From the IMG/VR virus record IMGVR_UViG_3300025770_000870, positions 1 to 64,000 of that record: 64,000 nucleotides of DNA, one strand, 5' to 3'. The position numbers were made by a program, and so were the translations under genes. This document shows positions 1 to 15,097 of this stretch, one piece after another. Under the pieces are notes generated by a model. That model was not told the origin of the DNA. It saw only the letters and a list, made by a program, of their open reading frames with translations, and did not search any database. The stretch's first letter is position 1, and every line of letters begins with the position of its first letter.

Positions 1-112
1 CACCACCTTTTGTCTCTGTTCTAATCCTTCTATCTATATAGAAAATTCCTTCGTTGGTTTCCACTTTTACAGTTCCACCATCTCTATATACGTCTATGTT
101 ATTTATTATCAT
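1..112 (-). CDS. Array micro-gene, truncated by window edge
   Basis: ATG from the repeat at 110-112; MIINNIDVYRDGGTVKVETNEG... stays open to position 1. Confidence 0.7.
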   Translation of the reverse strand, partial: MIINNIDVYRDGGTVKVETNEGIFYIDRRIRTETKGG

Positions 113-234
113 CTTTGTTTTGGTTTATTGAATTTAGCAAAGTATTCGAATCCCTCTTTTATAGTCTTAAAAAACATTGGTTTATTGAATGGTCCTTTTT
201 TAGGTTTCTCAAATAACTTTTTATTTGCCTTCAT
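109..234 (-). CDS. Array micro-gene, 41 aa, basic
   Basis: Manual translation MKANKK...FNKPKQR*; starts and stops in junction repeats. Confidence 0.65.
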   Translation of the reverse strand: MKANKKLFEKPKKGPFNKPMFFKTIKEGFEYFAKFNKPKQR

Positions 235-400
235 CTTTGTTTTGTTCGTATTCATAAAATTCTTTAATAAAAACTACTACTTCATTGGGTACAGGTATCA
301 TGTCACCATAACTTGTCTGATGCTCCATAAGACCTCTTTCTAGTAGAGAAGATATCCAACCTGAATATTCTTCTGGTATATTTAACGTTAATTTACTCAT
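221..400 (-). CDS. Array micro-gene, 59 aa
   Basis: Manual translation MSKLTLNIPEEYSGW...EQNKDEGK*. Confidence 0.65.
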   Translation of the reverse strand: MSKLTLNIPEEYSGWISSLLERGLMEHQTSYGDMIPVPNEVVVFIKEFYEYEQNKDEGK

Positions 401-642
401 CTTCGTTTTGGTTTAAATTCAATGTACTTATTAAATTGTCTTTTATATTCATCCCACTCTTCACTTGTTGGTGGTGTTTCTCTATCTAACCAACTCTTAA
501 TATCAATCTCTAACTTTAATCTAAGGTTGTTTGTTGCTTTGTCTATTCCTATGTCAATCATCTTTGTTTTGGTTAATTTATTGTATCTTTCGGCAATATC
601 AGACATTACTTCTCCTATATGTTTTGGTTCTCTTTTATTCAT
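397..642 (-). CDS. Array micro-gene; apparent read-through fusion of two units
   Basis: ORF track. Internal repeat at 559 lacks one A and reads LTKTKM. Ends KPKRR. Confidence 0.7.
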   Translation of the reverse strand: MNKREPKHIGEVMSDIAERYNKLTKTKMIDIGIDKATNNLRLKLEIDIKSWLDRETPPTSEEWDEYKRQFNKYIEFKPKRR

Positions 643-779
643 CTTTCGTTTGGTTTAATTTTCTTAAACTTTGCCTTACCATCTTTATCATAACCAATAA
701 ACTTCACATCTGGTATTGTGAAACAAAACTCTTTTATTGGTATGTGTGGTACATATTTGTAACCTTCTTTGCTCATCAT
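639..779 (-). CDS. Array micro-gene, 46 aa
   Basis: Manual translation MMSKEGYKYVPHIP...KIKPNER*. Confidence 0.65.
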   Translation of the reverse strand: MMSKEGYKYVPHIPIKEFCFTIPDVKFIGYDKDGKAKFKKIKPNER

Positions 780-1036
780 CTTTGTTTTGGTTTAATTATA
801 GGATTCGGTTCTTCAAATAAACAGAAACGTTTACATTTCCCACCTTCCACATCGACCATATCAAACCATTGGGATAATGGTCGAGTGTAATAACTACCGA
901 ATTCTTGCGATTGATAGACTACTGTTATTTCGTCATTTACTGTGTTTTTAGCTAAGTGTAAAACTTCATAAGTTCCACCTTTATAGTGTTGGTAGATTCT
1001 ATTAAATTGTGGATATGTTTCTCTTTTATTTTTCAT
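776..1036 (-). CDS. DUF1653-family protein (array unit)
   Basis: YQHYKGGTYEVLHLA...VVYQ...YYTRPLSQW matches the DUF1653 pattern; ends KPKQR. Confidence 0.75.
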   Translation of the reverse strand: MKNKRETYPQFNRIYQHYKGGTYEVLHLAKNTVNDEITVVYQSQEFGSYYTRPLSQWFDMVDVEGGKCKRFCLFEEPNPIIKPKQR

Positions 1037-1172
1037 CTTTGTTTTGGTTTAGTATGTGTCTAATAAAGAAATTAACTCTGTCTTCAATATCTTTATCATT
1101 ATCTCTTGGTTTGAATTTCATTCCATTATCTTCAACCCATTCTTTAATATCACAGGCACATCTTTTATTTCT

Positions 1173-1430
1173 CTACTCATCTTGTTTTGGTTTAAATGTT
1201 TTTATTATTTCACCTCTCTTATCTCCTATACCCATTTGATAGTATTCATAACTTCTCGGTGGTTTTGAAAATACGTGTTCTTCATTAGATTCACAATACT
1301 CCCATTGAGGTCCATCAAAAGTCATATCCATCCAATTTGATATAATATACAAATCAGAGTTGCATATCGGACATTTATCACTTGATAACGTTTTTTCCTC
1401 GTAATGACTTAAATTATCTAACTTACTCAT
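1173..1430 (-). CDS. Array micro-gene with CPIC...C-x4-H putative zinc ribbon
   Basis: ORF track; bounded by repeats. Confidence 0.65.
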   Translation of the reverse strand: MSKLDNLSHYEEKTLSSDKCPICNSDLYIISNWMDMTFDGPQWEYCESNEEHVFSKPPRSYEYYQMGIGDKRGEIIKTFKPKQDE

Positions 1431-1545
1431 CTTTGTTTTGGTTTTTATGTTTAACTTTAGTAGTTCTTTTTGCCAAATATCTATTTAACCATTTATCAGA
1501 CCACCATTTACCCTTAAACTTTTTTATAATGTCTTTTTTACTCAT
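1423..1545 (-). CDS. Array micro-gene, 40 aa, very basic
   Basis: Manual translation MSKKDIIKKFKGKWW...KNQNKDE*. Confidence 0.6.
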   Translation of the reverse strand: MSKKDIIKKFKGKWWSDKWLNRYLAKRTTKVKHKNQNKDE

Positions 1546-1625
1546 CTTCTTTGTTTTGGTTTAATAGCCACATTAAAACGTGGATTAACATTATTTAAAA
1601 ACCATTGAAACGGTTTTTATTTTTG

Positions 1626-1853
1626 TTACCTACAATTAAAAGTTTTTACAACTGTTTTTTTTGGTGGTCTACTATTTGTTTTATCAATTTCAATTAACTT
1701 TTCTGCTTCCTCAATAGTTCTGTATGTATTTATAGGGTATCTTTTTTCATTTTGTATTTGAAACCAAAATGGATAATACCATAGTCGTTTTTGCACTTCA
1801 AAACCACCAAATTTATCTGTTACTATCCTGTATTGTGTTTTACATATTCTCAT
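1626..1853 (-). CDS. Hypothetical phage protein (array)
   Basis: ORF track; YRIV...FEVQKR..FW pattern typical of small phage proteins. Confidence 0.7.
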   Translation of the reverse strand: MRICKTQYRIVTDKFGGFEVQKRLWYYPFWFQIQNEKRYPINTYRTIEEAEKLIEIDKTNSRPPKKTVVKTFNCR

Positions 1854-1899
1854 TATTTCTATATTTTCTTTTACTCATCTTTGTTTTGGTTTAAATATG

Positions 1900-1992
1900 T
1901 TATTTTTGTCTAAATCCAATAACCGTTACAAATATGGCTATGTATATTAATACACAGAATTGTAAATAATCTATTACTTCTTTCTCATTCAT
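1900..1992 (-). CDS. Array micro-gene, 30 aa, single TM
   Basis: MNEKEVIDYLQFCVLIYIAIFVTVIGFRQK*. Confidence 0.55.
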   Translation of the reverse strand: MNEKEVIDYLQFCVLIYIAIFVTVIGFRQK

Positions 1993-2158
1993 CTTCTTTG
2001 TTTTGGTTTAAGAGATCTATTAATTTCTTATCTTTTTTGTTTGGAATGAATTCGTTATTTCTGAATTTGCGTAATTCGTTTCTTCCATACATTTCTAAAA
2101 TATATCCTTCTACTCTTATAACATTAAATTCTTTGTTTGTCTTTATTACTTTACTCAT
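1985..2158 (-). CDS. Array micro-gene, 57 aa
   Basis: Manual translation MSKVIKTNKEF...LNQNKEDE*. Confidence 0.6.
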   Translation of the reverse strand: MSKVIKTNKEFNVIRVEGYILEMYGRNELRKFRNNEFIPNKKDKKLIDLLNQNKEDE

Positions 2159-2170
2159 CTTTGTTTTGGT

Positions 2171-2365
2171 TTAATATCTTAATTTTATTTGGTCATAGTC
2201 AGTATCGTAATACTCACCATTATCTTCTTTGTGTTTTCTTATTAGTTGGTCAAGTAAGATTTCACAAAGTCCCACTTCTGAACAATCACCTTTATCCCAA
2301 CCCATATAATTCTGTTTGGTTATGGTATCACCCATGTCTAATAGTTCTTCTATCTTATCTATCAT
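2171..2365 (-). CDS. Array micro-gene, paralog of 3378..3587
   Basis: Shares MIDKIEELLDMGDTIT...KGDCSEVGLCEILLDQLIRKHKE...IKLRY. Confidence 0.8.
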   Translation of the reverse strand: MIDKIEELLDMGDTITKQNYMGWDKGDCSEVGLCEILLDQLIRKHKEDNGEYYDTDYDQIKLRY

Positions 2366-2571
2366 CGTTCTTTAATTAAATAATCTTTTAACCCTTCTAT
2401 CCAAGTTGGAATCATACTATAATATTGGTGTGACGAAGAACTAAATCTCATATTCCTATTATCTTCATAGTATTGATATTTATCTTTTAGTTCTTGTATT
2501 TTACTTTCAACATCTTCTACGGTTGAAACTTTTATCATACTCACTATTTCTTCCTTAATTAATGTATTCAT
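2362..2571 (-). CDS. Array micro-gene, hypothetical
   Basis: ORF track; ATGA overlap with the next gene. Confidence 0.7.
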   Translation of the reverse strand: MNTLIKEEIVSMIKVSTVEDVESKIQELKDKYQYYEDNRNMRFSSSSHQYYSMIPTWIEGLKDYLIKER

Positions 2572-2827
2572 CTTTGTCTAAATTATCTTGAATATATTCT
2601 CTTATCATTTTAGGTGTTATATTACAACCACCATGTTCAATTTCATATTCACCGAATCCAAGTTCACTAAATTCTACTCTCTTTATAATTTGTTTAGTGC
2701 TGGGGTTATATATTCTCACCTCTGCTTTTTTATCTATATCATGTTCTATGATATATTTCCATTCCACACCTTTTACATTTATATTTCTGAGTTTAAGCAC
2801 TTTAATTCTAAAATTCTTCCGTTTCAT
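2555..2827 (-). CDS. Array micro-gene, hypothetical
   Basis: ORF track. Confidence 0.7.
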   Translation of the reverse strand: MKRKNFRIKVLKLRNINVKGVEWKYIIEHDIDKKAEVRIYNPSTKQIIKRVEFSELGFGEYEIEHGGCNITPKMIREYIQDNLDKDEYIN

Positions 2828-2901
2828 CTCTTTCTAATTTTTCTTCTTTCTTGGGAGTTTAGGTCTTGGTTCCCACTTTATATAGATTATTCCTTCTTTA
2901 C

Positions 2902-3186
2902 TCATCTTTGTTTTGGTTTAACTACCCATTGGTCTCTTGTTTCTTCGTACCTAACATACGTTCCTATATCTGTGTTAGTTATCCAAACCTTTTTTCTAGG
3001 TGTTTCTTTATTTGGCGAAAATAATACTTTATGGAATTGATATACCTTTCCATTAGTTAATGATTCATGGTTTCCTATATACTTTTTATAGATATATGTT
3101 GGATTAGGGTTATCGTCTGATGTTACATATCTAACATGAGGAAACACGAATACTTCTTCTATATTTATTTTATCTTCTTTACTCAT
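2902..3186 (-). CDS. Array micro-gene, hypothetical
   Basis: ORF track; MSKEDKI...KPKQR, repeat to repeat. Confidence 0.75.
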   Translation of the reverse strand: MSKEDKINIEEVFVFPHVRYVTSDDNPNPTYIYKKYIGNHESLTNGKVYQFHKVLFSPNKETPRKKVWITNTDIGTYVRYEETRDQWVVKPKQR

Positions 3187-3365
3187 CTTTGTTTTGGTTT
3201 AATCCATCCATTATTAGATATAGCTATTTTTGCTCCCATCATAAATGCATTCAATGTTGGTATAGTAGGTTCTGCACCAACCAAATCACACCATTGTTCT
3301 GCTATTTCTTTTAGTTCTTTATCTGAACATATAGGAATTAGTGGTAAATAATCAGTTTTCTTCAT
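3183..3365 (-). CDS. Array micro-gene, hypothetical
   Basis: ORF track; ends KPKQR. Confidence 0.75.
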   Translation of the reverse strand: MKKTDYLPLIPICSDKELKEIAEQWCDLVGAEPTIPTLNAFMMGAKIAISNNGWIKPKQR

Positions 3366-3377
3366 CTTTGTTTTGGT

Positions 3378-3587
3378 TTAGTATCTTAATTTAATTTCAT
3401 CATAATCCCTATCATACCACTCTCCATTCTCTTCCTTATGTTTTCTTATCAATTGGTCTAATAGTATTTCACATAAGCCTACTTCTGAACAATCACCCTT
3501 ATTCCAAATGGAAAATTTCCGTTCAGCAGAACAAAGATCAGTTATGGTGTCACCCATGTCTAATAGTTCTTCTATCTTATCTATCAT
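3378..3587 (-). CDS. Array micro-gene, paralog of 2171..2365
   Basis: Near-identical protein; repeat to repeat. Confidence 0.8.
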   Translation of the reverse strand: MIDKIEELLDMGDTITDLCSAERKFSIWNKGDCSEVGLCEILLDQLIRKHKEENGEWYDRDYDEIKLRY

Positions 3588-3599
3588 CTTTGTTTTGGT

Positions 3600-3815
3600 T
3601 TAATCCTTAAATACGGGTGTATAATTTCTATATTTTTTTCTTAGTACATCATAAGACATATCCCAGCCATCTTCTCTGATAACCTTACTGTGTAATATCG
3701 GAGGATGAGAAGAACCTATTTTATCTTCAACCCATTTTAATCTTTTCTTTAGTTCTTGATTTTCATACTCAAGTAACCTTACTCTTTCTTTTAATTCTTT
3801 ATTAAAAATCATCAT
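3600..3815 (-). CDS. Array micro-gene with N-terminal coiled coil
   Basis: ORF track; LKERVRLLEYENQELKKRL. Confidence 0.7.
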   Translation of the reverse strand: MMIFNKELKERVRLLEYENQELKKRLKWVEDKIGSSHPPILHSKVIREDGWDMSYDVLRKKYRNYTPVFKD

Positions 3816-3833
3816 CTTTGTTTTGGTTTATAA

Positions 3834-3929
3834 TTACAGTGAAACTCCTAATGCAAAACCTATTACAAAACCAATACTAATCCCTATTGATAAAGCTACG
3901 TCCATATGTTTACTAGTATATTTACTCAT
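3834..3929 (-). CDS. Array micro-gene, 31 aa, TM with GxxxG repeats
   Basis: MSKYTSKHMDVALSIGISIGFVIGFALGVSL*. Confidence 0.6.
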   Translation of the reverse strand: MSKYTSKHMDVALSIGISIGFVIGFALGVSL

Positions 3930-4147
3930 CTTTGTTTTGGTTTAACATATTTAATGTCTTCCTCATCTTTAATATCCAATACCCATTCCATTAAATCAAT
4001 CATACTGCATTGTTGGTTGAATTGTTCTCTTTTTTCAGATATACCCCACAAACCTTTATATGGTGGATTATTTAAAAAATGAGCTAATTCATCCTTATGT
4101 TTATTCATTTCTATTAACTTGTTATATATTTCTTCTCTACTTCTCAT
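3926..4147 (-). CDS. Array micro-gene, hypothetical
   Basis: ORF track; ends KPKQR. Confidence 0.75.
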   Translation of the reverse strand: MRSREEIYNKLIEMNKHKDELAHFLNNPPYKGLWGISEKREQFNQQCSMIDLMEWVLDIKDEEDIKYVKPKQR

Positions 4148-4418
4148 CTTTATTTTGGTTTATTTTAATAGAATAAATACATAATTCTTTATCCAAAAAT
4201 TCATTCAACTTTTTTTCTATCTTTTCTCTGTCTTTAATAGTATTGTCAACTCCGTTGTTAAAACTTTCCCACATTATCAGTAAGGATTTTATTTCTTCTT
4301 TATTCATATCTTATTTATTTCATTCCACCATATAATCTTTGGTCTAATATACTGTTGATGATGACTCCATTTGGCTTTTATCCTTATTATGTCACTTTCT
4401 GTTTTACTCATCTTTGTT

Positions 4419-4586
4419 TTATTTGTTAAATGAATCTAGATATCTGTTAACTTCTTCTTGGTGATTCGGTCCGAAGAAATCATCATATAGCTTTCTTATC
4501 TCATTAATCTCTTTTTGTAACTTTGCTGCCAATTTAAAGTCTTCGTTCTCTATTGATACTTTAAGTTTTTCTAATAAAATATTCAT
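4419..4586 (-). CDS. Array micro-gene, 55 aa, UVR (UvrB/UvrC) motif-like
   Basis: LKVSIENEDFKLAAKLQKEI resembles the UVR consensus A-x-x-x-EDFE-x-AA-x-LRD-x-I. Confidence 0.55.
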   Translation of the reverse strand: MNILLEKLKVSIENEDFKLAAKLQKEINEIRKLYDDFFGPNHQEEVNRYLDSFNK

Positions 4587-4599
4587 CTTTGTTTTAGTT

Positions 4600-4731
4600 T
4601 TAATAAGCTAATTCTAAAGTAAACTTTAGAAAGTGAAAGCTAAAACATTTATATTCTACGTGTAAATTAAATGTTGGTATCAAATACCAATCATCTTTTG
4701 CCCACCATTCTATATTAATTTCTTTAATCAT
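4600..4731 (-). CDS. Array micro-gene, 43 aa
   Basis: MIKEINIEWWAKDDWYLIPTFNLH...LAY*. Confidence 0.6.
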   Translation of the reverse strand: MIKEINIEWWAKDDWYLIPTFNLHVEYKCFSFHFLKFTLELAY

Positions 4732-5010
4732 CTTTGTTTTGGTTTAAATTTGAGCTCTTCTTCTATTATCTTCACCATTTCATCAAAAGTAACACCCTTT
4801 TCGTCTGCCTGTTGTTTATTAAATCTACTATCACCAAATATAAATTTCTGCTTTATTATGACCCGTTTTATCTGTACCCATTTTTGACATCAATATTAAC
4901 TTTCCACCACCATCAAATGTAATGGTAATTTTATTGTTTTTTGGGCTAGTCTTAATATCCTTTATCGTTTTACCTGAATATTCACCTTCTTTAATCATCT
5001 TTGTTTTGGT

Positions 5011-5229
5011 TTAATCTAAATCTAATTCATTTTTCATAAATGCTTCCCATATCAGTTCACGTAATGCTGTTTCTTGTAATGGTTTTGTACCAGGTTTTGT
5101 ATCAAATGTAGGAAGTACATCAATATCCAATATGGTCTTCAAGTCATCACTGATAGTTACGTGGTATTCTACTCCTTCGTGTACTACTTCTAATATGAAT
5201 CTTGTGTGTATTTTATTTACTTTACTCAT
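5011..5229 (-). CDS. Array micro-gene, hypothetical
   Basis: ORF track; stop is the TAA of the repeat. Confidence 0.75.
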   Translation of the reverse strand: MSKVNKIHTRFILEVVHEGVEYHVTISDDLKTILDIDVLPTFDTKPGTKPLQETALRELIWEAFMKNELDLD

Positions 5230-5401
5230 TGTTGTTTTGGTTTATTAATTCTTCTTTGAATTCTTTCCAATATGTTTGTGTTGAACTATATTGTTTCTCT
5301 AAAATGGTATCATTTACAATTTGTAATGCTTTTTTAAAACCTTCCCTTTGTAACATTATTGAGACTTGGTTTTCCATTGGTGATAATTTTCTTTTACTCA
5401 T
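5222..5401 (-). CDS. Array micro-gene, 59 aa
   Basis: MSKRKLSPMENQ...INQNNNE*. Confidence 0.65.
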   Translation of the reverse strand: MSKRKLSPMENQVSIMLQREGFKKALQIVNDTILEKQYSSTQTYWKEFKEELINQNNNE

Positions 5402-5525
5402 CTTTGTTTTGGTTTTTTCTCATTTGTATTTGAAATATATTACCTAAACAGAATCCTATCATCACACAAAATATCCCAATTGATATTAGTTGGGGGAATG
5501 TATATAAATCTATTTCACTCATCAT
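5394..5525 (-). CDS. Array micro-gene, 43 aa, single TM
   Basis: MMSEIDLYTFPQLISIGIFCVMIGFCLGNIFQIQMRKNQNKDE*. Confidence 0.6.
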   Translation of the reverse strand: MMSEIDLYTFPQLISIGIFCVMIGFCLGNIFQIQMRKNQNKDE

Positions 5526-5541
5526 CTTTGTTTTAGTTTAA

Positions 5542-5907
5542 TTAATCCCACCATCCTTGGATATTATGTTCAATATACTTCCATAGTAATTGGTGAGCTC
5601 TTTCTTGTTTTTCAATTGCTTCCTTTATGGTAAGTTTTCCTTTATAAAAATCTTCCATATACTCTTCATCATATACTTTATCCATCAATCTAATTGCAGT
5701 ACGAATCTTTTGAGCATGTATATTAGAATCAACAGTATATGATTTATCTGACTCTAATAAATCAGCAGTACGTTCTAATTGATATCTGAATAGTTCTATT
5801 GCATGAACATAATCAAAATCATATCCTTTCCAAATAATAGGTAGGAAATCCCATACACGTTTTAAGCGTCTAAAGAACCATGTTATGTTATTATAAATCT
5901 TCTTCAT
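5542..5907 (-). CDS. Hypothetical phage protein
   Basis: ORF track; WDFLPIIWK..DFDY...GWWD terminus typical of phage hypotheticals. Confidence 0.8.
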   Translation of the reverse strand: MKKIYNNITWFFRRLKRVWDFLPIIWKGYDFDYVHAIELFRYQLERTADLLESDKSYTVDSNIHAQKIRTAIRLMDKVYDEEYMEDFYKGKLTIKEAIEKQERAHQLLWKYIEHNIQGWWD

Positions 5908-6146
5908 CTTTTATACTTTCTTATCAGTTTGAAAATTTCTGTTATATCAGTAAACTGTATTTCTTGTCCTTGTTTAATCGGTGTAAATGCTACTGTGAAT
6001 CCATGATTAGCTTGAAATGTCTCAGTAACACTTTTACCATTTATGCGTTCTATGTAAATCCAAGGGTAGTTACCACTAAGCTTTACTTCTACACCTATCT
6101 TTTGTAGTCTTCCTATAAATACTGTTATTTTATCTTCTTTAATCAT
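5904..6146 (-). CDS. First gene of the array, hypothetical
   Basis: ORF track; GNYPWIY. Confidence 0.75.
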   Translation of the reverse strand: MIKEDKITVFIGRLQKIGVEVKLSGNYPWIYIERINGKSVTETFQANHGFTVAFTPIKQGQEIQFTDITEIFKLIRKYKR

Positions 6147-6195
6147 CTTTGTTTTAATTTCAGTAGTATTTCTTATTAAAATTCATCAATATCCA

Positions 6196-6228
6196 TAAAT
6201 ATACGGATATTATATTGGTTATACAAAA
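6196..6228 (-). promoter_or_regulatory. Putative early promoter driving the micro-gene array (Bacteroidota sigma70-like)
   Basis: Minus strand TTTGTATAACCAATATAATATCCGTATATTTA: TTTG (-33) and a TAnnTTTG-like (-7) box. The same 20-mer core recurs at 9938-9957. Confidence 0.6.
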
Positions 6229-6285
6229 ATATGTGATTAATTCTGTATAGTTTCTCCTCATTTCATATTTTATATATATGAAAAG

Positions 6286-7392
6286 ATGATTTTAGAAAAA
6301 GTAAGATTCACCAAAACAGGTGACAAGGAATTTTATAAAGTACTCAGAAAGCGTGTTAACGCTTACTTTAAAGAAAAAGGTATTTCAAAATTTGCAAACG
6401 TAAACATGGTATTGAAAACTATATTTATGTTGGCTTTATACTTAACACCTTTCATACTAATACTCACAACACTTTCTTCTTCTTTATTAATTATATTGAT
6501 GTGGATGTTGATGGGGTTTGGAATGGCAGGAATTGGCCTTTCAATAATGCACGATGCTAATCACAGCGCATACTCGAAGAATAAACACGTTAATTTATTT
6601 ATGGGAAAACTGATTTGGTTAGTTGGTGGTAGTGATGTAAACTGGAGGATTCAACATAATGTTTTACACCACACTTATACAAATGTACATGGAATGGATG
6701 AAGACATTGAAATTGATCCATTAATGCGTTTTTCACCAAATCAAAAATTGAGAAAGGGTCATAAGTTTCAGTTTATTTATGCATGGTTCCTTTATGGCAT
6801 GATGACTATGATGTGGGCAACAACTAAAGATTATTCTCAATGGAAAAGATATAAGAATAAAGATTTAATTAAAACACAGGGGTTATCAAGTAAGAGTTTT
6901 CTTTGGACTTTAATTTCAACAAAAACTATTTATTTAATACTTACTCTTGGTCTACCATTACTTATAGGGTCAATGCCTTGGCACCAAACAGTATTATGTT
7001 TCTTATTAATGCACTTTATTGCTGGTGTAACATTAGCATCAATTTTCCAACCAGCACACGTTGTTCCTTCATCAGATTATTCAAAGCCTGATGAAAACGG
7101 AAATGTAGAAGTATCTTGGGCAGAAAACCAATTAATGAACACAACGAACTTCGCACCAAAAGCACGTTTATTTTCTTGGTATGTAGGTGGGTTAAACTAT
7201 CAAATAGAACACCACTTATTTCCAAATATTTGTCATGTTCATTACCGTAAGATTTCAAAAATTGTAAGAGATACTGCATTTGAATACGAACTACCTTATC
7301 ATTCCTATAAAACATTTTATGAGGCTCTATCAAACCATACAAAGATGCTTTATACTTTAGGAAGAGTTGAAGACGCTCCAGTAATACATTAA
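6286..7392 (+). CDS. Membrane fatty acid (acyl-CoA) desaturase
   Basis: Three His boxes HDANH, HNVLHH, QIEHHLFP; TM segments. Confidence 0.93.
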   Translation: MILEKVRFTKTGDKEFYKVLRKRVNAYFKEKGISKFANVNMVLKTIFMLALYLTPFILILTTLSSSLLIILMWMLMGFGMAGIGLSIMHDANHSAYSKNKHVNLFMGKLIWLVGGSDVNWRIQHNVLHHTYTNVHGMDEDIEIDPLMRFSPNQKLRKGHKFQFIYAWFLYGMMTMMWATTKDYSQWKRYKNKDLIKTQGLSSKSFLWTLISTKTIYLILTLGLPLLIGSMPWHQTVLCFLLMHFIAGVTLASIFQPAHVVPSSDYSKPDENGNVEVSWAENQLMNTTNFAPKARLFSWYVGGLNYQIEHHLFPNICHVHYRKISKIVRDTAFEYELPYHSYKTFYEALSNHTKMLYTLGRVEDAPVIH

Positions 7393-7403
7393 ATAAACAG
7401 CAT

Positions 7404-7435
7404 AAAAAAGGTGTTATCATTATAATAACACCTTT
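7404..7435. terminator. Intrinsic terminator between convergent genes
   Basis: Inverted repeat AAAGGTGTTAT-N7-ATAACACCTTT with flanking A run. Confidence 0.7.
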
Positions 7436-7450
7436 CATTAATTCAATAAG

Positions 7451-8131
7451 TTATTTCAAAAATTGAACATGAATAACAGATTCTCCCGTTAAAGGTTTTG
7501 TTGGTGGACAAGCGGCTAAAGCTTCATCATATTCTATTTGTGCAGCGACTTCGTCTGATTTTGCATCACTAGCATTCCCACTTGTTATAGCTTTTGCTGC
7601 TCCAGCTCCAGTTGCAGCGGATGCTGCTAAAGCATTTGCCGCTGATGCTGCTGTTAAGGCTGTAGTACAAGTTGCTAGTGTAGCTGACGCGGTCACAAGT
7701 GCAGCAGATGTAATAGCTTCGGCCGCTACCGCAATTGCTTCTGTATCGGTCGCTCCTGCAAGCCATAATGCTGCGGCTGCCGTTGCCGCTTCAGATGGTC
7801 CAAAATCCCAAAATGGAATCCAATTTGATGCGGCTGCCGCGGTTACAGCTACTCCAGCTGCCGCAACATCTGCAGTTGCTGCTGTAAGTGTTGCTGTAGC
7901 TGCCGTCTCAGCTGTTACTGCTAATGCTTGTGCGGTAACAGCTGCTACTTGTGCACTGCTCGCAACTGCATTTGCGCTTGCTGCTAGTGTAGCAGCCGCA
8001 GAAGCTGCGATGAGTGTATCATTGGCAATACTATCAGCCTTTGATGCACTAACTAATTTTGACTTTGCTACTGCTAAAGCTTGTGTAGCATCAACCAAAC
8101 GTTCTTGTGGTGTTCTTTTATCTCCTGTCAT
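7451..8131 (-). CDS. Ala-rich heptad-repeat helical hairpin protein
   Basis: Ala at every 7th residue from 15 to 99; central WIPFWDFGP hinge. Confidence 0.8.
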   Translation of the reverse strand: MTGDKRTPQERLVDATQALAVAKSKLVSASKADSIANDTLIAASAAATLAASANAVASSAQVAAVTAQALAVTAETAATATLTAATADVAAAGVAVTAAAASNWIPFWDFGPSEAATAAAALWLAGATDTEAIAVAAEAITSAALVTASATLATCTTALTAASAANALAASAATGAGAAKAITSGNASDAKSDEVAAQIEYDEALAACPPTKPLTGESVIHVQFLK

Positions 8132-8237
8132 ATTTTTTTTTATTTTTATATATCTAATTATATTGTTTTTGTTCTTTCTTTATATTTGATTGTAAAATGA
8201 TTCTTATTTTGAATGGTAGATTATAATATATAATCTA

Positions 8238-8759
8238 ATGAAATATCTAATGAAATATTTAAAGACATACGAATCTATGGTTGATGCTCCTTCTGGGTAT
8301 AAACATAAACCTAAACTATCAAGTCTTACCAAACAAGAGATTAAAGATATCTTAGTTAATTTCTCTGATTGGGATAACTGTGATATTAAAATAGATGAAC
8401 TTCACAATAATAAATGGGGTGATTATGTTAGAAGTGGTTATGAATTTAGATTCGATATTAATATATCATCTGTTATCAGATACGGAGAAGATCTTGGCCA
8501 TACCAATCCAATAGAATTAAACAATGATTTACTTGATGATTTAGTTAGACTATATTCTATATTCAAGGAAGATAAGTGGGATTGTGATATAACACTAACA
8601 ATTAAAGGAAATAATAAGAATTATAAAGAAACAGTTTACACTGTACCAACAGCAGGATATTCGATAAGTGAAGATGGTATTTATTATCAATATGATAAGA
8701 TAGACTTGGATAAGATACCACCAATTATGAATATCGAATTACAATTAATATCATATTAA
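8238..8759 (+). CDS. MKYLK-leader family protein
   Basis: MKYLMKYLKTYES; EIKDILVNFSD motif; TAATATATA at 8224. Confidence 0.8.
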   Translation: MKYLMKYLKTYESMVDAPSGYKHKPKLSSLTKQEIKDILVNFSDWDNCDIKIDELHNNKWGDYVRSGYEFRFDINISSVIRYGEDLGHTNPIELNNDLLDDLVRLYSIFKEDKWDCDITLTIKGNNKNYKETVYTVPTAGYSISEDGIYYQYDKIDLDKIPPIMNIELQLISY

Positions 8760-8779
8760 TAAAATTAATATATAGTCTA

Positions 8780-9331
8780 ATGAAATATTTAAAGAAATTC
8801 AATGAGAGTTCTAATCTAGAACAAACCTCACTTAACTTAAAACAAACAATACAAGATATATTCTTAGACCTTACTGATGATGGGTATAAGATAAGTATTC
8901 AAACTCCAAAATCTCCGACACAGGTAGAGTCTAGTCGTGTAAATAAATTACATCCTAACTACGGAGATAAGATAACATTAATAATATCTTTAGAAAAGGT
9001 AGAATCTAATTATGAAAATATCCTTGGTAGAACTTTTAGTAATGTTCCATTTATATTTAGTGAGTGTATTGATAATTTTGATAGGGTATATGATTATGCT
9101 TCTTCTTATGGTGATGTAGTTACTAATCAAGTAGGTGCTTTATTAAACAATATTGTTGATGTCATCACCCCAATTAGCCATTCCGTTTTTTCTTATGGAC
9201 CAAATCATCCTTCACGTACAATCAAAGATAATAACTGGGGTTCATTTAAAGATAAGTTAATAAATGAATATGGTTTAGATACATTGGTTAGATTCCTTAC
9301 AATAAACCTTACTATTGTATTAGATACCTAG
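8780..9331 (+). CDS. MKYLK-leader family protein
   Basis: MKYLKKFNES; IQDIFLDLTDDGY; TAATATATA at 8766. Confidence 0.85.
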   Translation: MKYLKKFNESSNLEQTSLNLKQTIQDIFLDLTDDGYKISIQTPKSPTQVESSRVNKLHPNYGDKITLIISLEKVESNYENILGRTFSNVPFIFSECIDNFDRVYDYASSYGDVVTNQVGALLNNIVDVITPISHSVFSYGPNHPSRTIKDNNWGSFKDKLINEYGLDTLVRFLTINLTIVLDT

Positions 9332-9616
9332 ATTTTTTAATTTGAAATCTCTAATTTCTTGATTTGTTAAATCACAAGGCTTCCACGATGATTTATTTAA
9401 AAATATCACGTCCAAAAACCGTTTGCTTAGACTGGTTCTATTAATTTGTTTCTTATTACACCTTTTACATTTACGTATATCGTAAGTTTTGGTGCTTATA
9501 TTTTGATCCAATCTGTTCGAATTACCAACGATAGTGACCATACTTTTGTATACCACGGAATCTTTATAATATTCCCAGTTATGTTTTATCTTACACATCA
9601 TTTTCAACCTCATCAA
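9320..9616 (-). CDS. Hypothetical protein with C/H metal-binding residues
   Basis: CKIKH...CKRC; C-terminal IRDFKLKNLGI. Confidence 0.65.
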   Translation of the reverse strand: MMRLKMMCKIKHNWEYYKDSVVYKSMVTIVGNSNRLDQNISTKTYDIRKCKRCNKKQINRTSLSKRFLDVIFLNKSSWKPCDLTNQEIRDFKLKNLGI

Positions 9617-9917
9617 TAAACTTTAACATTCTATTTAAACAGTTATGTGGTGTGTTATCTGTGATTGATTTAGAATAAATCATAAAGTGTCTAAGTACAT
9701 AATCACCTTCACATTTATCATAAGATCTAGTACTAAATACTTCAACACCAGATTTGTACATTTCATTAATAAAATCTTCGAACCTGGTTCCATATTCTGT
9801 ATGTGTGTATGTGATAGTATCAAATTTATCTAATACAACGGCAGAATCTATCTTAAAGGTAATAACATAAGAGTTACCCTCTCTTCTAATAGTATGTATA
9901 ATCTTATCTGTTATCAT
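9591..9917 (-). CDS. Hypothetical protein
   Basis: ORF track; downstream of the ATCCGTATATTG promoter motif. Confidence 0.7.
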   Translation of the reverse strand: MITDKIIHTIRREGNSYVITFKIDSAVVLDKFDTITYTHTEYGTRFEDFINEMYKSGVEVFSTRSYDKCEGDYVLRHFMIYSKSITDNTPHNCLNRMLKFIDEVENDV

Positions 9918-10108
9918 TTAGTATAATTTACTTTCACAATATACGGATATTATATTGAAATAAAGACTTTCTGATGTTATATTATATAATATATACAAAA
10001 AAATTAAAAACAAAGGATAAAACAAACTGTTCTAGTGTAGGAATATGGTGTTGTTCTAGTCCTTTTGAAAAGTGGTAATATAAAATTGAGGTTTATATCA
10101 CTTACAAT

Positions 10109-10825
10109 CTATTGGGTGGTAAGTTTTAATTTAACCTTATATATTGATGGTTTTATTAAATCATTATTAACCTCACTCTTTAGTATTAAAACATATTCAA
10201 TAGAATATCTATCATATTCACTTATAAAAGTACCCAATCTACTATAATCACCCTTTCTCTTATAAAAGAAAGAATAATAATCTGTTGTATTATCTCTTTC
10301 TAGTAAAGTCATTTTTCTTGTACCACCACCCAATTCTCTGAATGATTGTTTAGTGTTTACTAAAATAGGTGTATTGGTTTTTTCGTTACGAATCATCTCC
10401 TTCTGTGTGATACTCCATCTAAATGATGGTAAACCCTTTGTCTTGATTAAGAATTCAGTTTGGTCAAGTGCATGTTCTGACATAAATGATTTCATATCTA
10501 TATCAGTAACCTTTCCTGTTAATACTGTTTTACCTGATGTTGGGTTAGTTAGAACACTTGACATCTTTTGTTGGTATTCAATTTCACCATCTAATACATA
10601 ATCACCAATAGATAATACTTGATCTATGATAGAGTTGATTTCATGTCTATCATCTTCATCAAAGATAGATTTAAGTACTGTCATACCAGAAGTTCTCTTC
10701 TTTGTAATACTAACCACATTATTTTTGACATCAAGTTTAAATTCATCATCATTTATACTACTAAATAATAATCTGATATCATCATCATTGGATTCGAATA
10801 GTTTATAACTGTTTAAAAACTTCAT
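10109..10825 (-). CDS. MKYLK-leader family protein
   Basis: MKFLNSYKLFES. Confidence 0.8.
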   Translation of the reverse strand: MKFLNSYKLFESNDDDIRLLFSSINDDEFKLDVKNNVVSITKKRTSGMTVLKSIFDEDDRHEINSIIDQVLSIGDYVLDGEIEYQQKMSSVLTNPTSGKTVLTGKVTDIDMKSFMSEHALDQTEFLIKTKGLPSFRWSITQKEMIRNEKTNTPILVNTKQSFRELGGGTRKMTLLERDNTTDYYSFFYKRKGDYSRLGTFISEYDRYSIEYVLILKSEVNNDLIKPSIYKVKLKLTTQ

Positions 10826-10943
10826 ATACTATATATAATAAACGTAATTCAATTTATGAATACACAAGAATTATTTAATTATGAAGTATTTAAAATTTGA
10901 GTTAAAAAGTTTAATATATATAAATAAGAAAAAAAAAGATAAT

Positions 10944-11480
10944 ATGAAACATTTAAAGAAGTATGAATCATTTCTAATATTAGAAGGTGATACTCACCAA
11001 ACAGTAAAAGAACTAAACGGTGAAAATAAATCAAAATTACTTAATGGTGTAGAGTTTTATGTTCATTCTATGAATGTATTAAAAGGTAGTGATGATACTA
11101 AATTAAGCGGATCTAAATTCAAAGTTAAGATTGTTGACGCTGGTCAATTTGATACTGGTGCTTCTGATACTATTACGTTAAAACCTAAATTAGAAGTTAG
11201 TGATATTCAATTGGGAGAAAACAACGAAGAAAATGAGCATCTACAAGGAAATTACGGAATGATTAAACAATTCAAAGATAGTAGTTTTATTATTTTTGCA
11301 AGAGATTCTAAAGGTGATGGAATTAATAATGAATTAAGATGTGATTATCCTTTGAATAGTCAATTTGTTATCGAAGCGGAAAGTAAATTAATACCGGCTC
11401 TGAATGAAGTTTTTGGAACTGAATTCAAATTCAGTCCTTTTGAGACAGATAAAAGATATGTCATCTTTAGTGCTAAATAA
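10944..11480 (+). CDS. MKYLK-leader family protein
   Basis: Preferred start MKHLKKYESFLILE, downstream of TAATATATA at 10912. Confidence 0.8.
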   Translation: MKHLKKYESFLILEGDTHQTVKELNGENKSKLLNGVEFYVHSMNVLKGSDDTKLSGSKFKVKIVDAGQFDTGASDTITLKPKLEVSDIQLGENNEENEHLQGNYGMIKQFKDSSFIIFARDSKGDGINNELRCDYPLNSQFVIEAESKLIPALNEVFGTEFKFSPFETDKRYVIFSAK

Positions 11481-11484
11481 ACAG

Positions 11485-11513
11485 AAACCTCTCAAAATTT
11501 GAGAGGTTTTTTT
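11485..11513 (+). terminator. Intrinsic terminator
   Basis: AAACCTCTCAAA-A-TTTGAGAGGTTT inverted repeat followed by a T run. Confidence 0.85.
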
Positions 11514-11863
11514 ATATCTATAAATTATTAATATAAGATTGATTAGTCAATGTATAAGAATAATAAATAATATTAAATAATGGGATAAAGCCATTGCTCT
11601 TTGTGAGAAACGAAGTGAACAACATGACCTTCTACAATTACGAGCTTAAATTCATTGATGAATCACAACCATTCAAATGGTCACAACAAAAAAAGTACAT
11701 ATATCTCAATAGTGAATCATTCACTAAACTAACACAACCAAGTAAAATAAATATCTCACCCAGATAGAATGGGAAAGATAATTTTATAAGACACATTTTC
11801 CTTTTCATTTGTTTATCTTTTTTTATGCAAAATTTAATATATAAACTAATAAAATAAAATTTT

Positions 11864-12745
11864 ATGAAATACTTAAAGTTATACGAACAATTTAGTCTTT
11901 TATTAGAGAAATTAGATACCAAAGGAAAACAACTATTTTTACTGTGTGGTCCAAGTGGTACAGGTAAAACTTACTTATCTGGTAAAATAGGAATCCGCCA
12001 TTGGACTGAATCATCAGATTTCGAAGGAGATTGTTTAATTACAACCGATGTCGTGGGAATTGAACAAGAAAAAATTACACAGTTATTAGAAGCTAAAGGT
12101 TGTCCTAAGTTAGCTGAGATATCAAAAACATTTAAAGAAGATGGAATATTTACTATAAAAGTATATTATCAAGATATTTATAAAAAGTGGGAAGATGAGT
12201 CTAGTGATGAGGAAAAAGAGATATTAAATCCGTTATGGGATATTTGTACAGAATCAAATAGTAAATGTCCTAATACAAATCAACAAGATACTAGAGTTTG
12301 GAAACTAGCTTTTGTTGGTTATTTATGGGGTACTGGTAGAATTGTTTTTGATGATGTTAGACCAACAATAAATAATTTTTATGATGGTATAAAAGAATAT
12401 ATAATTTATACTCCACTTATAACATACCTTAGTGATAATTTGATTAATAGACTTAAAAAGGATCCTAATATGAGTGTAGAAGATAAAATTAAAAAGTTTT
12501 TTGAGTGGTTTCAATTATCGGAAACAGTTGATAATTCATTTCCAGATGATATAAAATATACTATTCAAGAGATTGAAGAATCTATGAAAGGGTTAAATAT
12601 TAAAATAGAAGACTTTATAAACATTTCTAAAATTACAGATGAAATGAAAAATGATGGTTTCTACTTTATAAAAGGTGGGATTCAAGGAGATAAAGATAAT
12701 AGTCCGGTATTTAATTCAAGAAGTGGTCAGAAATTAAGCTTATGA
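11864..12745 (+). CDS. P-loop NTPase/kinase with MKYLK leader
   Basis: Walker A GPSGTGKT, RIVFDD Walker B-like; leader MKYLKLYEQFSLLLE. Confidence 0.8.
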   Translation: MKYLKLYEQFSLLLEKLDTKGKQLFLLCGPSGTGKTYLSGKIGIRHWTESSDFEGDCLITTDVVGIEQEKITQLLEAKGCPKLAEISKTFKEDGIFTIKVYYQDIYKKWEDESSDEEKEILNPLWDICTESNSKCPNTNQQDTRVWKLAFVGYLWGTGRIVFDDVRPTINNFYDGIKEYIIYTPLITYLSDNLINRLKKDPNMSVEDKIKKFFEWFQLSETVDNSFPDDIKYTIQEIEESMKGLNIKIEDFINISKITDEMKNDGFYFIKGGIQGDKDNSPVFNSRSGQKLSL

Positions 12746-13359
12746 AATATCTAAAGAAATTTGAAGAATTAAAGTTAAGAGATTATACCAATACTTTTAG
12801 TGAGAATTTTGTGCGTGATGTTAGAGATATAGTACAAGACTTAGAAGAAGACTCACCTTATACAATAGAATTAGATTTAACGTTCAATGGGTTAGAAGGT
12901 CGTAAAGGTAACCATTCACGTTTGGAAGGAGAAGATAAAAGACTATGGGATAGTGACTTACCAGCTATTACTGTATTCGTTAAAGATCCTGTTGAAAGAC
13001 CTGACTTATGGCAAGATGATAAGAAACGCTTTGTTACTAAGAGATGGGTTAATACAGATGGTTCATTAAGAGGTAAGGCTAGAAAGATTAAGATGTGGAA
13101 TCAAGAATGTATTAACGTAGCTAAACGATTAAAAGAATACTTAGGTGATAACTATTTATTATTCACTATAATTGATAGGGGTGATGAAAGGTCATTTGAT
13201 TTAGATACTATTAATAAACCAAGTGATATAGGTCAACCAAGTGGTGATGGATGGTGTTCTTTCCCTAGACTTAGTGTACGTAACTATCAACAAGGAGACA
13301 TAACAAGTTTTAGAATACTATACAAACCAGATGAATATATTGAATCAGAGATAGTATAG
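12742..13359 (+). CDS. MKYLK-leader family protein
   Basis: MKYLKKFEE; DVRDIVQDLEED. Confidence 0.8.
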   Translation: MKYLKKFEELKLRDYTNTFSENFVRDVRDIVQDLEEDSPYTIELDLTFNGLEGRKGNHSRLEGEDKRLWDSDLPAITVFVKDPVERPDLWQDDKKRFVTKRWVNTDGSLRGKARKIKMWNQECINVAKRLKEYLGDNYLLFTIIDRGDERSFDLDTINKPSDIGQPSGDGWCSFPRLSVRNYQQGDITSFRILYKPDEYIESEIV

Positions 13360-13363
13360 ATTG

Positions 13364-13696
13364 TTATTTCATCCCACCAGGCTTACAACATACTGGTAGT
13401 TTATCTACTGATGAAGATATCGCTTTCACGTTATCAGCGTCATATCCTGTTTCAGAAATAACTTTTTTAATTTGATCCAAAGAAATTTTCTTCGTGGAAT
13501 ACTTAACCGTTACTTTTTTATCTTTCAAATTTAATTCTGAAAATTTGATTCCTTTTGTATAATTCAATTTATCTTCAATTCTAATTTTACAAGAACCACA
13601 TTCTGCTGATGTTTGAATCACAGATGTTTTTGTTTGTGCATTAATAAATGTAGTGAAAAAGAGTGCTATCGATAATAATAATATTTTATATTTCAT
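13364..13696 (-). CDS. Secreted heavy-metal-associated (HMA) domain protein
   Basis: Signal peptide; CGSC metal motif; GYDAD; C-terminal LPVCCK. Confidence 0.85.
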   Translation of the reverse strand: MKYKILLLSIALFFTTFINAQTKTSVIQTSAECGSCKIRIEDKLNYTKGIKFSELNLKDKKVTVKYSTKKISLDQIKKVISETGYDADNVKAISSSVDKLPVCCKPGGMK

Positions 13697-13751
13697 TTTT
13701 TATATATTAGTTCTAACCAAAATATACAACTATTGTACCAAAATCAACTTT

Positions 13752-14096: not shown

Positions 14097-14109
14097 CTAT
14101 TTTATTTAG

Positions 14110-15083: not shown

Positions 15084-15097
15084 CTTATTTACTTGTT

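What the first reader, a model, noticed from the sequence alone, without database searches (positions are those of the whole stretch)
1..6230. Repeat-punctuated micro-gene cassette array: about 35 tiny genes joined by one conserved 18-nt junction
Seen: from a promoter at about 6200 leftward past the window edge, almost every minus-strand gene (mostly 30-120 aa, mutually unrelated) begins at the ATG of TAAACCAAAACAAAGATG. I count 13 exact and about 15 variant copies, mostly 80-400 bp apart. The layout is repeat/unit/repeat like a CRISPR or integron array, but each unit is a protein-coding mini-gene, and the repeat is short and non-palindromic. The rest of the window has only 3 clear copies, so it is not a generic start context. 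Inference: a modular gene-shuffling system in which the repeat is the crossover point for gain, loss and reordering of early host-takeover or anti-defence micro-genes. Known loose analogues are the PeSL cassettes of T4-type phages and mycobacteriophage start-associated sequences; both differ in structure. No recombinase is visible in this window.
Basis: partly seen in the sequence, partly recalled or inferred. Interest (0 to 1): 0.92.

Follow-up and report, generated by a model that had tools for sequence, protein, structure and literature searches.

The report
Shared start-junction repeat shuffles phage micro-genes
A giant uncultivated phage, probably of Bacteroidota, joins about 45 tiny genes with one 18-base stop-and-restart sequence that many other uncultivated phages share, and natural strain variants show genes lost, swapped and moved by crossovers inside that sequence.

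Summary
TAAACCAAAACAAAGATG occurs 13 times exactly and about 15 times as variants on the minus strand of 1..6161, against 0 expected. The array runs 4.2 kb past the window edge: about 10.3 kb, 44-47 genes and 31 copies in all.

The repeat is tied to the start codon. It has the adenines that favour Shine-Dalgarno-free initiation in Flavobacterium. It also offers a stop codon in all three frames, so any upstream gene ends within a few bases of the next ATG.

It is not private to this phage. The exact 18-mer is in at least 120 stretches of roughly 100 viral contigs, which carry different polymerase types. In 185,579 cellular genomes it is at chance level, and GenBank phages hold no real match.

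Strain variants of this phage, with 99.9-100% identical flanks, show a deletion, replacements and a relocation. At least 8 of 13 breakpoint ends lie in repeat copies (P about 2e-6). Between different phages, 29 of 40 shared cassettes end at the repeats on both sides.

Best reading: a translational stop-restart adaptor that also serves as the homology patch for cassette shuffling. It combines the ideas of mycobacteriophage start-associated sequences and T4-type PeSL cassettes. No dedicated recombinase is shown, and the micro-gene functions are unknown.

The parts
1..6161 (-). Window part of the micro-gene array: about 33 ORFs of 12-121 aa, tightly packed. It continues 4.2 kb beyond base 1 (L176 6872-11047).
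   Evidence: ORF list and start contexts. Full array in L176, 100% identical to the window. Third-codon-position excess in 38 homologue pairs, 201/128/367 differences by position, shows the ORFs are coding.
6196..6227 (-). Candidate Bacteroidota-type promoter (TTTG, 20 nt, TATATTTA) in front of the first array gene.
   Evidence: It is the only such match on the array strand in 1..6300. A near-identical 32-mer lies at 24133-24164, and its 15-nt core is repeated exactly at 44324-44338. This is a consensus match only.
6144..6161 (-). First junction, degenerate: the distal TAAACC is lost and AAAACAAAGATG is kept.
   Evidence: 3 mismatches.
4996..5013 (-). Exact junction copy. The other 12 exact copies are at 110, 777, 1034, 1876, 2156, 2903, 3184, 3363, 3585, 3813, 3927 and 4729 (start positions, each 18 nt).
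398..415 (-). Variant junction copy (1 mismatch). Other variants start at 559, 640, 1428, 1546, 1993, 4145, 4584, 5227, 5399 and 5523. Degenerate or indel copies lie at 232-249, 1178-1194 and 4409-4426.
1432..1996 (-). 565-nt segment holding the 30-, 12/75- and 40-aa genes. It is absent from strain variants L181 and L186. The deletion joins the repeat copies at 1993-2010 and 1428-1445 through 13 shared bases.
   Evidence: L176 4876-5440; window coordinate = 6872 minus L176 coordinate.
1872..2141 (-). Segment replaced in variants L182 and L183 by 730 nt carrying 47-, 55- and 97-aa genes. The left breakpoint lies in the repeat plus ATGAGTAAAG. The right breakpoint is a microhomology outside a repeat in the variant.
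   Evidence: The 97-aa gene is 84-85% identical to cassettes in L112, L090, L036 and L030.
3613..3781 (-). 169-nt deletion inside the 71-aa gene in variant L181. It is not at a repeat, and so serves as a counter-example.
1546..1563 (-). Repeat copy with a 3-nt AAG insertion before the ATG. In variants L184 and L182 the 40-aa gene behind it is replaced by a copy of the 57-aa cassette (window 1985..2158), with the junction inside the repeat/ATGAGTAAA.
397..642 (-). 81-aa ORF that fuses two units. Its internal repeat at 559-576 has TAA changed to TTA. The homologue in L047 covers only the downstream 54 aa and starts at the repeat.
1840..1878 (-). 12-aa ORF behind an exact repeat, overlapping the start of the 75-aa gene (1626..1853). 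It is a scar of a junction placed 21 nt upstream of that gene's own ATG.
   Evidence: boundary c2.
2834..2905 (-). 23-aa ORF behind an exact repeat. It is the 5' remnant of a 98-aa gene that is intact in variant L191.
2171..2365 (-). 64-aa paralogue of the 69-aa gene at 3378..3587.
   Evidence: families D7, D12.
15356..15823 (-). Second, small cluster outside the array: an exact copy at 15806-15823 leading a 145-aa gene and a variant at 15356-15373 leading an 86-aa gene. The 86-aa protein is 68% identical to a gene in L047.
44301..44318 (-). Variant copy (2 mismatches) leading a 90-aa gene, 5 nt downstream of the repeated promoter-like 15-mer.

Best explanation
The 18-mer, in extended form T-TAAACCAAAACAAAG-ATG-A-GTAAA, is a portable stop-restart adaptor for a host that does not use Shine-Dalgarno sequences.

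As RNA (inferred). The array is read as one or a few long transcripts from a promoter near 6200. Whatever frame the upstream micro-gene is in, it runs into a stop supplied by the adaptor: TAA at -15, TGA in ATGA, or T(A/G)(A/G) at +5. The ribosome then starts again at the adaptor's ATG, which sits in an open, A-rich context with A at -3, -6, -12 and -13.

As DNA (shown by comparison). Every unit carries the same 18-30 nt at both ends, so general homologous recombination between copies does two things. Within a genome it deletes, duplicates and moves units. Between co-infecting phages it swaps units. The new neighbour stays correctly terminated and translated.

Spread (inferred). The adaptor travels with its cassettes, so a common pool of micro-genes and one adaptor sequence have spread over several phage lineages. 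No dedicated recombinase is needed.
For: Tied to translation.
- The core AAACCAAAACAAAG is followed by ATG directly in 193 and after 3 nt in 19 of 214 unique copies in other phages.
- There is one copy per gene, always on the sense strand.
- A-3, A-6, A-12 and A-13 are experimentally positive determinants in F. johnsoniae (PMC6847099).
- Predicted unpaired probability is 0.68-0.79 over -15..-1, against 0.54 for the array as a whole.

Three-frame stop.
- In the window the upstream ORF ends at TGA +1 (9 junctions), TAA -15 (4), TAA +5 (3) or close by.
- In 155 unique exact copies elsewhere, 141 have an upstream ORF ending in the junction. The frames are used about equally: 36, 31 and 50.
- In those copies +4 is A in 96% and +5 is T in 70%.

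Host type. There is no G-rich Shine-Dalgarno signal at any gene start. The window encodes two proteins with type IX secretion sorting domains.

Recombination.
- Strain variants with 99.9-100% identical flanks differ by a 565-nt deletion between two copies, by replacements and by a relocation. At least 8 of 13 breakpoint ends lie in junctions, which make up about 8% of the array (P about 2e-6).
- The same junctions recur in independent assemblies, several built at k=141.
- Across contigs there are 40 cassette-limited homologies of at least 85% identity; 29 are bounded by junctions at both ends, for example L112/L090 at 98.8% over 335 nt from -14 to +24.
- Two cassettes adjacent in L010 lie 3 kb apart in the window.

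Spread. At least 120 viral stretches hold the exact 18-mer. The contigs carry PolA, PolB or BT4734-type primase modules. Cellular genomes give 49 hits, most of them not ORF starts.
Against: - No expression data exist. Polycistronic transcription and reinitiation are inferred from anatomy only.
- A generic need for an open A-rich leader does not explain the fixed C's at -11, -10 and -5 and the G at -1, nor why hosts do not use the sequence. A specific reader, protein or RNA, may exist.
- In homologous cassette pairs the 18-mer diverges about as fast as the coding sequence (8.2% against 9.2%). Constraint on each single copy is therefore moderate.
- Not all indels use the repeat: the 169-nt deletion and one replacement boundary do not.
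- Breakpoints at gene borders are also what selection on random recombinants would leave.
- Only 64 kb of a genome of at least 551 kb was read for recombination or translation genes.
Confidence: 0.62

Rival explanations
1. The repeat is the binding or cleavage site of a phage-encoded RNA-binding factor. This could be a translational repressor or activator, or an endoribonuclease, in the manner of T4 RegA or RegB. It would switch the whole class of genes on or off together. Shuffling would then be a by-product. This could hold together with the best explanation.
For: Specific bases (C-11, C-10, C-5, G-1) are kept in hundreds of copies in front of unrelated genes. The sequence is virus-specific and not used by cellular genomes. 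In other contigs it marks a gene class: micro-ORFans plus thymidylate synthase and a PD-(D/E)XK nuclease. RegA and RegB are cited from general knowledge of T4, not tested here.
Against: No candidate factor was found in the 64 kb read. The contigs that carry the repeat belong to different lineages, so all of them would need the same factor. Single copies tolerate 1-3 changes.
Confidence: 0.15
2. The repeat is a compact promoter for a phage-specific RNA polymerase or sigma factor. Transcription would start at or just before the ATG, giving leaderless mRNAs, and each micro-gene would be its own transcription unit.
For: Its length and asymmetry (about 17 nt followed by G) recall single-subunit polymerase promoters; this is from memory and is a lead only. 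The repeat is virus-specific. The window encodes a protein with sigma-70 region 4.
Against: There is one copy per 60-aa gene, and upstream ORFs overlap it in all three frames. The ATG lies at fixed distance 0 or +3. No conservation is seen upstream of -16. No phage polymerase was seen in the window. The first gene, behind a host-type promoter-like site, keeps the ATG-proximal half.
Confidence: 0.08
3. The repeat matters only for expression. The breakpoints at it are the survivors of random illegitimate recombination filtered by selection for intact genes, or are joins made by assemblers at repeats.
For: Phage mosaic boundaries commonly fall at gene borders (general knowledge). Many assemblies break inside the array. 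Some events do not use the repeat.
Against: The 565-nt deletion joins two copies through 13 shared bases and leaves a hybrid copy. Several junctions fall inside the repeat plus ATGAGTAAA, not merely between genes. Identical junctions recur in independent assemblies at k=141, far longer than the 18-30 nt repeat. The enrichment has P about 2e-6.
Confidence: 0.1
4. A dedicated site-specific cassette-capture system, integron-like, uses the repeat as its recombination site.
For: The repeat-unit-repeat layout and the single-cassette exchanges between genomes.
Against: The repeat is not palindromic and no hairpin is predicted. No integrase family was found among the window's proteins. The repeat is locked to the start codon. 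Crossovers also occur in the adjoining ATGAGTAAA and at plain microhomologies.
Confidence: 0.04

Closest known systems
Start-associated sequences (SAS) of Cluster K mycobacteriophages (Pope et al. 2011, PMC3203893)
   Same: Both are short asymmetric repeats in one orientation, just upstream of start codons with a preference for ATG, in front of unrelated non-structural genes. The upstream stop sometimes lies inside the repeat. Both are almost absent from host genomes, and a translational role is proposed but unproven.
   Different: SAS is 13 bp, contains the Shine-Dalgarno core AGGAG, sits 3-7 bp from the start, has 11-19 copies per genome, and about half the copies have an inverted-repeat extension. 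It is confined to one phage cluster and has not been linked to shuffling. The repeat here has no Shine-Dalgarno core, includes the ATG at fixed distance, supplies stops in three frames, is far denser (31 copies in 10 kb), spans several lineages, and is a documented crossover point.
PeSL (promoter-early stem-loop) cassettes of T4-type phages (Arbiol et al. 2010, PMC2839356)
   Same: Both are repeated regulatory junctions that flank ORFans in hyperplastic regions. They span the upstream stop to the downstream start. Recombination between copies deletes, inserts and replaces single genes while keeping them expressed.
   Different: A PeSL is about 100 bp and is built from a sigma-70 promoter, a G/C stem-loop terminator and a Shine-Dalgarno sequence, so each unit is its own transcription unit. 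The repeat here is 18-27 nt with no promoter and no hairpin, which makes the module translational. Mini-circles were shown for PeSL and are untested here.
Kozak-like, Shine-Dalgarno-free initiation regions of Bacteroidia (Baez et al. 2019, PMC6847099)
   Same: A at -3, -6, -12 and -13, low secondary structure, and no Shine-Dalgarno sequence.
   Different: Host initiation regions are a loose preference, not a fixed 18-mer. The exact sequence is at chance level in cellular genomes.
Integron gene cassettes
   Same: Promoterless small units in one orientation, apparently behind one candidate promoter, exchanged one at a time.
   Different: No attC-type palindrome, no integrase seen, and the repeat is part of the coding and translation signal.

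Membership tests
Start-associated sequences (Cluster K type) | Short asymmetric repeat, one orientation, immediately upstream of start codons of unrelated genes | tested here: met
Start-associated sequences (Cluster K type) | Rare or absent in host and cellular genomes | tested here: met
   49 stretches in 185,579 species genomes, most of them not ORF starts. The actual host is unknown.
Start-associated sequences (Cluster K type) | Contains the Shine-Dalgarno core (AGGAG) complementary to the 16S rRNA tail | tested here: not met
   The repeat has a single G and no Shine-Dalgarno core. It works like a SAS but is not a member of that family.
Start-associated sequences (Cluster K type) | Confined to non-structural genes | tested here: inconclusive
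   The repeat leads micro-ORFans, thymidylate synthase and a nuclease. Structural modules of these genomes were not available.
PeSL regulatory cassettes | Sigma-70-type promoter in each repeat | tested here: not met
   No promoter-like match sits at the junctions. Counts are below shuffled expectation, and there is one Bacteroidota-type match, at the array head only.
PeSL regulatory cassettes | Stem-loop terminator in each repeat | tested here: not met
   No local inverted repeats. The junction is predicted to be the least structured part of the array.
PeSL regulatory cassettes | Recombination between copies causes gain, loss and replacement of the flanked ORFans | tested here: met
   cross-contig comparisons.
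PeSL regulatory cassettes | Excised mini-circles carrying one unit and one hybrid repeat | not testable with these tools
   This needs reads or PCR.
Integron | attC sites: imperfect palindromes of about 60-140 bp at each cassette end | tested here: not met
   The repeat is an 18-nt non-palindromic sequence.
Integron | intI tyrosine recombinase next to the array | tested here: inconclusive
   No integrase family was found among the window ORFs scanned. The rest of the genome of at least 551 kb was not read.
CRISPR array | Non-coding spacers of uniform length between repeats of 23-47 nt | tested here: not met
   The units are coding ORFs of 12-121 aa with a third-codon-position excess. Rfam finds nothing.
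Bacteroidia Shine-Dalgarno-free initiation region | A at -3, -6, -12 and -13 and an unstructured leader | tested here: met
   Sequence set against PMC6847099; accessibility. Function in vivo is not testable here.

The most novel reading that the evidence does not exclude
The adaptor is the address label of a cassette commons shared across phage lineages. A phage-encoded factor would read it: either a specialised translation or RNA factor that gives adaptor-led genes priority on host ribosomes, or an annealing protein tuned to it. Huge Bacteroidota phages would then capture and express new micro-genes in an integron-like way, but at the level of a translational junction.
Probability: 0.12. Interest if true: 0.85.

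Novelty: new variant of a known kind. Interest (0 to 1): 0.64.

Why it matters
- It would be the first start-associated sequence described for phages of hosts that lack Shine-Dalgarno sequences. It gives a concrete 18-nt element for testing how internal cistrons are started on Bacteroidia ribosomes.
- The three-frame stop plus restart design explains how a gene can be dropped behind any neighbour and still be expressed.
- Strain variants show this working in nature in a phage of at least 551 kb. This suggests one route by which huge phages could build and turn over large sets of small accessory genes.
- The motif is a simple search key for early or accessory gene arrays in uncultivated phages, and for phage contigs wrongly binned into cellular MAGs.

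Tried and rejected
- GenBank phages. Megablast of 1..6300 found nothing. A 37-nt junction query gave only chance-level hits. There is therefore no deposited relative with the repeat.
- Literature. The motif string occurs only in unrelated virus papers. The phi14:2 study found no common motif upstream of early transcripts. The phage bS21 paper mentions no motif.
- Desaturase neighbours as syntenic relatives. L171 and L172 share only that one gene with the window.
- The 634-kb phage LR745206, hit by one window protein at 34% identity. The 41 kb around the hit hold no repeat.
- Rfam on the array: no match.
- The idea that the repeat is the generic start context: rejected.
- The idea that it is a host leader sequence: rejected.
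- The idea that all carriers are one phage clade: weakened by their different polymerase types.
- Absolute conservation of the repeat: rejected. It diverges 8.2% in homologous pairs.
- Not tried: protein searches of the large databases, structure prediction for the micro-proteins, and a metagenome-wide scan. They would not have decided between the readings.

Full report
**1.

TAAACCAAAACAAAGATG occurs 14 times exactly in the window, always on the minus strand. Thirteen copies lie between 110 and 5013 and one at 15806; shuffles give none. With up to three mismatches there are 29 copies, 25 of them between 110 and 6161, against 0.32 expected.

Every copy ends in the ATG of an ORF of 12-121 aa. 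The sequence upstream of the repeat is not conserved. The sequence downstream is often ATGAGTAAA. The repeat finder recovers the same family and finds no local inverted repeats. The other 66 long ORFs of the window have only a generic A/T-rich start context, without the C's and with T at -1. So the repeat is not the genome's ordinary start context.

**2. Where the window comes from.**

The window is the first 64 kb of IMG/VR contig 3300025770_000870, which is 241,918 bp long. The same sequence is listed in more than 160 blocks of the assembly collection, and the contigs read were 99.8-100% identical over the shared range. One of them is a 551,101-bp contig that also ends inside the array. The phage is therefore megaphage-sized.

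Many assemblies break inside the array. One contig (L176) crosses it. The array runs from window 6161 leftwards for about 10.3 kb, 4.2 kb beyond the window edge, up to a convergent gene. It has 44-47 genes and 31 repeat copies, 16 of them exact.

G+C is 29%. No gene start shows a Shine-Dalgarno signal. Two proteins carry type IX secretion sorting domains. A Bacteroidota host is the reasonable inference.

**3. The repeat is tied to translation.**

- In other phage loci the 14-nt core is followed by ATG directly in 193 and after three bases in 19 of 214 unique copies.
- It has A at -3, -6, -12 and -13. These positions were shown to raise initiation in Flavobacterium johnsoniae, which lacks Shine-Dalgarno sequences (PMC6847099).
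- It is predicted to be the least structured part of the transcript: unpaired probability 0.68-0.79 against a mean of 0.54.
- Only one Bacteroidota-type promoter-like site lies on the array strand, at 6196-6227 in front of the first gene. There are no terminator-like hairpins at the junctions.
- Rfam finds nothing.

**4. The repeat stops every frame.**

In the window the upstream ORF ends at the TGA of ATGA (9 junctions), at the TAA at -15 (4), at the TAA of ATGAGTAA (3), or within -21..+11. Among 155 unique exact copies in other phages, 141 have an upstream ORF that ends in the junction. The three frames are used about equally: 36, 31 and 50. In those copies +4 is A in 96% and +5 is T in 70%.

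Proteins in frames 1 and 2 therefore end in repeat-encoded tails (KPKQR, NQNKDE). The junction is a frame-independent stop followed at once by a start. This is the anatomy of termination-reinitiation coupling; the coupling itself is inferred.

**5. The repeat is shared by many phages and is not used by cells.**

The copies are often in same-strand clusters.
- The ORFs behind it have a median of 63 aa.
- 364 repeat-led genes fall into 252 clusters, 189 of them singletons.
- The repeat also leads a thymidylate synthase and a PD-(D/E)XK nuclease.
- The contigs carry different replication modules: PolA, PolB and a BT4734-type primase. They therefore appear to belong to several lineages.
- In one genome for each of 185,579 species there are 49 stretches. 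Most are not ORF starts. A few look like phage contigs binned into MAGs.
- GenBank phages hold no real match, and the literature search found no description.

**6. The units are real genes of unknown function.**

Thirty-eight homologue pairs show 201, 128 and 367 differences at codon positions 1, 2 and 3. Pfam finds only DUF1653 and a UVR motif. PHROGs gives three significant families of unknown function. 'Host takeover' and 'anti-defence' remain guesses.

**7. The repeat is a crossover point.**

Within this phage, contigs with 99.9-100% identical flanks differ as follows.

| Variant | Change | Breakpoints |
|---|---|---|
| L181, L186 | 565 nt missing (window 1432-1996) | Join two repeat copies through 13 shared bases |
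| L182 | Sequence unrelated to the reference to the left | Exactly at a repeat |
| L182, L183 | 270 nt replaced by 730 nt with three other genes | Left: in the repeat plus ATGAGTAAAG. Right: microhomology, not in a repeat |
| L184, L182 | Copy of the 57-aa cassette where the reference has the 40-aa gene | Junction inside the repeat/ATGAGTAAA |
| L191 | Diverges from the reference | 6 nt after a repeat's ATG |
| L190 | Diverges from the reference | 18 nt after a repeat's ATG |
| L181 | 169-nt deletion inside a gene | Not at a repeat |

At least 8 of 13 breakpoint ends fall in junctions, which cover about 8% of the array (P about 2e-6). The same junctions recur in independent assemblies, several built at k=141. 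Repeat-induced misjoins are therefore unlikely.

Between phages, 40 cassette-limited homologies of at least 85% identity were found, and 29 are bounded by junctions at both ends. Two cassettes that are adjacent in a 380-kb contig lie 3 kb apart here. The alternative cassettes of the strain variants are 84-90% identical to cassettes of other contigs.

Scars of such events are visible in the window:
- a 12-aa ORF at 1840..1878;
- a 23-aa remnant at 2834..2905;
- a fusion ORF made by TAA to TTA at 397..642;
- a headless C-terminal fragment at about 4732..4830.

**8. Interpretation.**

The best reading is a translational stop-restart adaptor that also serves as the homology patch for cassette shuffling. 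General recombination would be enough, and no recombinase is implied.

The exact identity across lineages, together with absence from cells, is best explained by the adaptor travelling with its cassettes. It would also stay uniform because only like copies recombine. A specific reader of the sequence is not excluded; the fixed C's and G are not explained by a need for an open leader alone. Single copies do drift (8.2% in homologous pairs).

**9. Comparison with known systems.**

It works like mycobacteriophage start-associated sequences but lacks their Shine-Dalgarno core. It shuffles genes like T4-type PeSL cassettes but has neither promoter nor hairpin. It is not an integron or a CRISPR array.

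I file it as a new variant of known kinds: apparently undescribed, moderately surprising, and directly testable.

Noticed in passing
L193 (ERZ27237634 k141_874280, 551,101 bp) and window 1..64000: The same phage is assembled elsewhere as a 551-kb contig that also ends inside the array. The 242-kb source contig is therefore a fragment of a megaphage-sized genome. A 507-aa protein (16198..17721) is 34% identical to one in the 634-kb uncultured phage LR745206.
   Followed up: partly
window 6286-7392, 26266-28943, 33024-34025, 60172-61380: Auxiliary metabolic genes: a fatty-acid desaturase, a NAMPT-like gene next to a NUDIX gene (NAD salvage), adenylosuccinate synthetase and a class I/II aminotransferase. 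Elsewhere among the 59 ORFs scanned are two QueC hits, a response-regulator receiver, PrsW, HD_4, HMA, an ABC membrane protein and a sigma-70 region 4 protein; these were not mapped to genes.
   Followed up: partly
window 61551-63146 and one unmapped ORF: Two proteins carry type IX secretion C-terminal sorting domains (CUB plus Por_Secre_tail; CHU_C). This is unusual cargo for a phage and a pointer to a Bacteroidota host.
   Followed up: no
window 6196-6227 and 24133-24164 (minus); 15-mer also at 44324-44338: A near-identical 32-mer with the Bacteroidota promoter layout (TTTG, 20 nt, TATATTTA) occurs twice, and its 15-nt core a third time, each upstream of a minus-strand gene. This is possibly the phage's own promoter class.
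   Followed up: partly
window 14109-14183 (minus): tRNA-Arg (anticodon TCT), just downstream of the small repeat-led cluster at 15823..14316.
   Followed up: no
window 55496-55801 (minus): This 101-aa protein has homologues (42-56% identity) in 11 repeat-bearing loci, where at least several of them (L028, L057, L015, L095, L065) are led by the repeat. Here the gene lacks the repeat. The same gene family can therefore occur with or without the adaptor, as reported for SAS.
   Followed up: partly
L139/L143 (Promethearchaeia MAG), L141/L166 (Campylobacteraceae MAG), L151 (Chlamydiales MAG), L155 (Aenigmatarchaeota MAG), L124, L130: Contigs in cellular MAGs carry phage-style copies of the repeat, several of them more than one (ATGAGTAAA or ATGATTAAAGAA after it, with variants nearby). 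They are probably phage contigs binned into the wrong genomes.
   Followed up: partly
window 4732-4830 (minus): An open frame without a start codon runs through the repeat to end at the TGA of its ATGA (about 4729). It is about 81% identical to the 3' end of genes in L034, L012 and L041. It is likely the remnant of a truncated cassette.
   Followed up: partly
window 1563-1626 (minus): This is the only sizeable non-coding gap in the array and holds two small hairpin-like inverted repeats before a repeat copy with the AAG insertion. It is a possible internal terminator or processing site.
   Followed up: no
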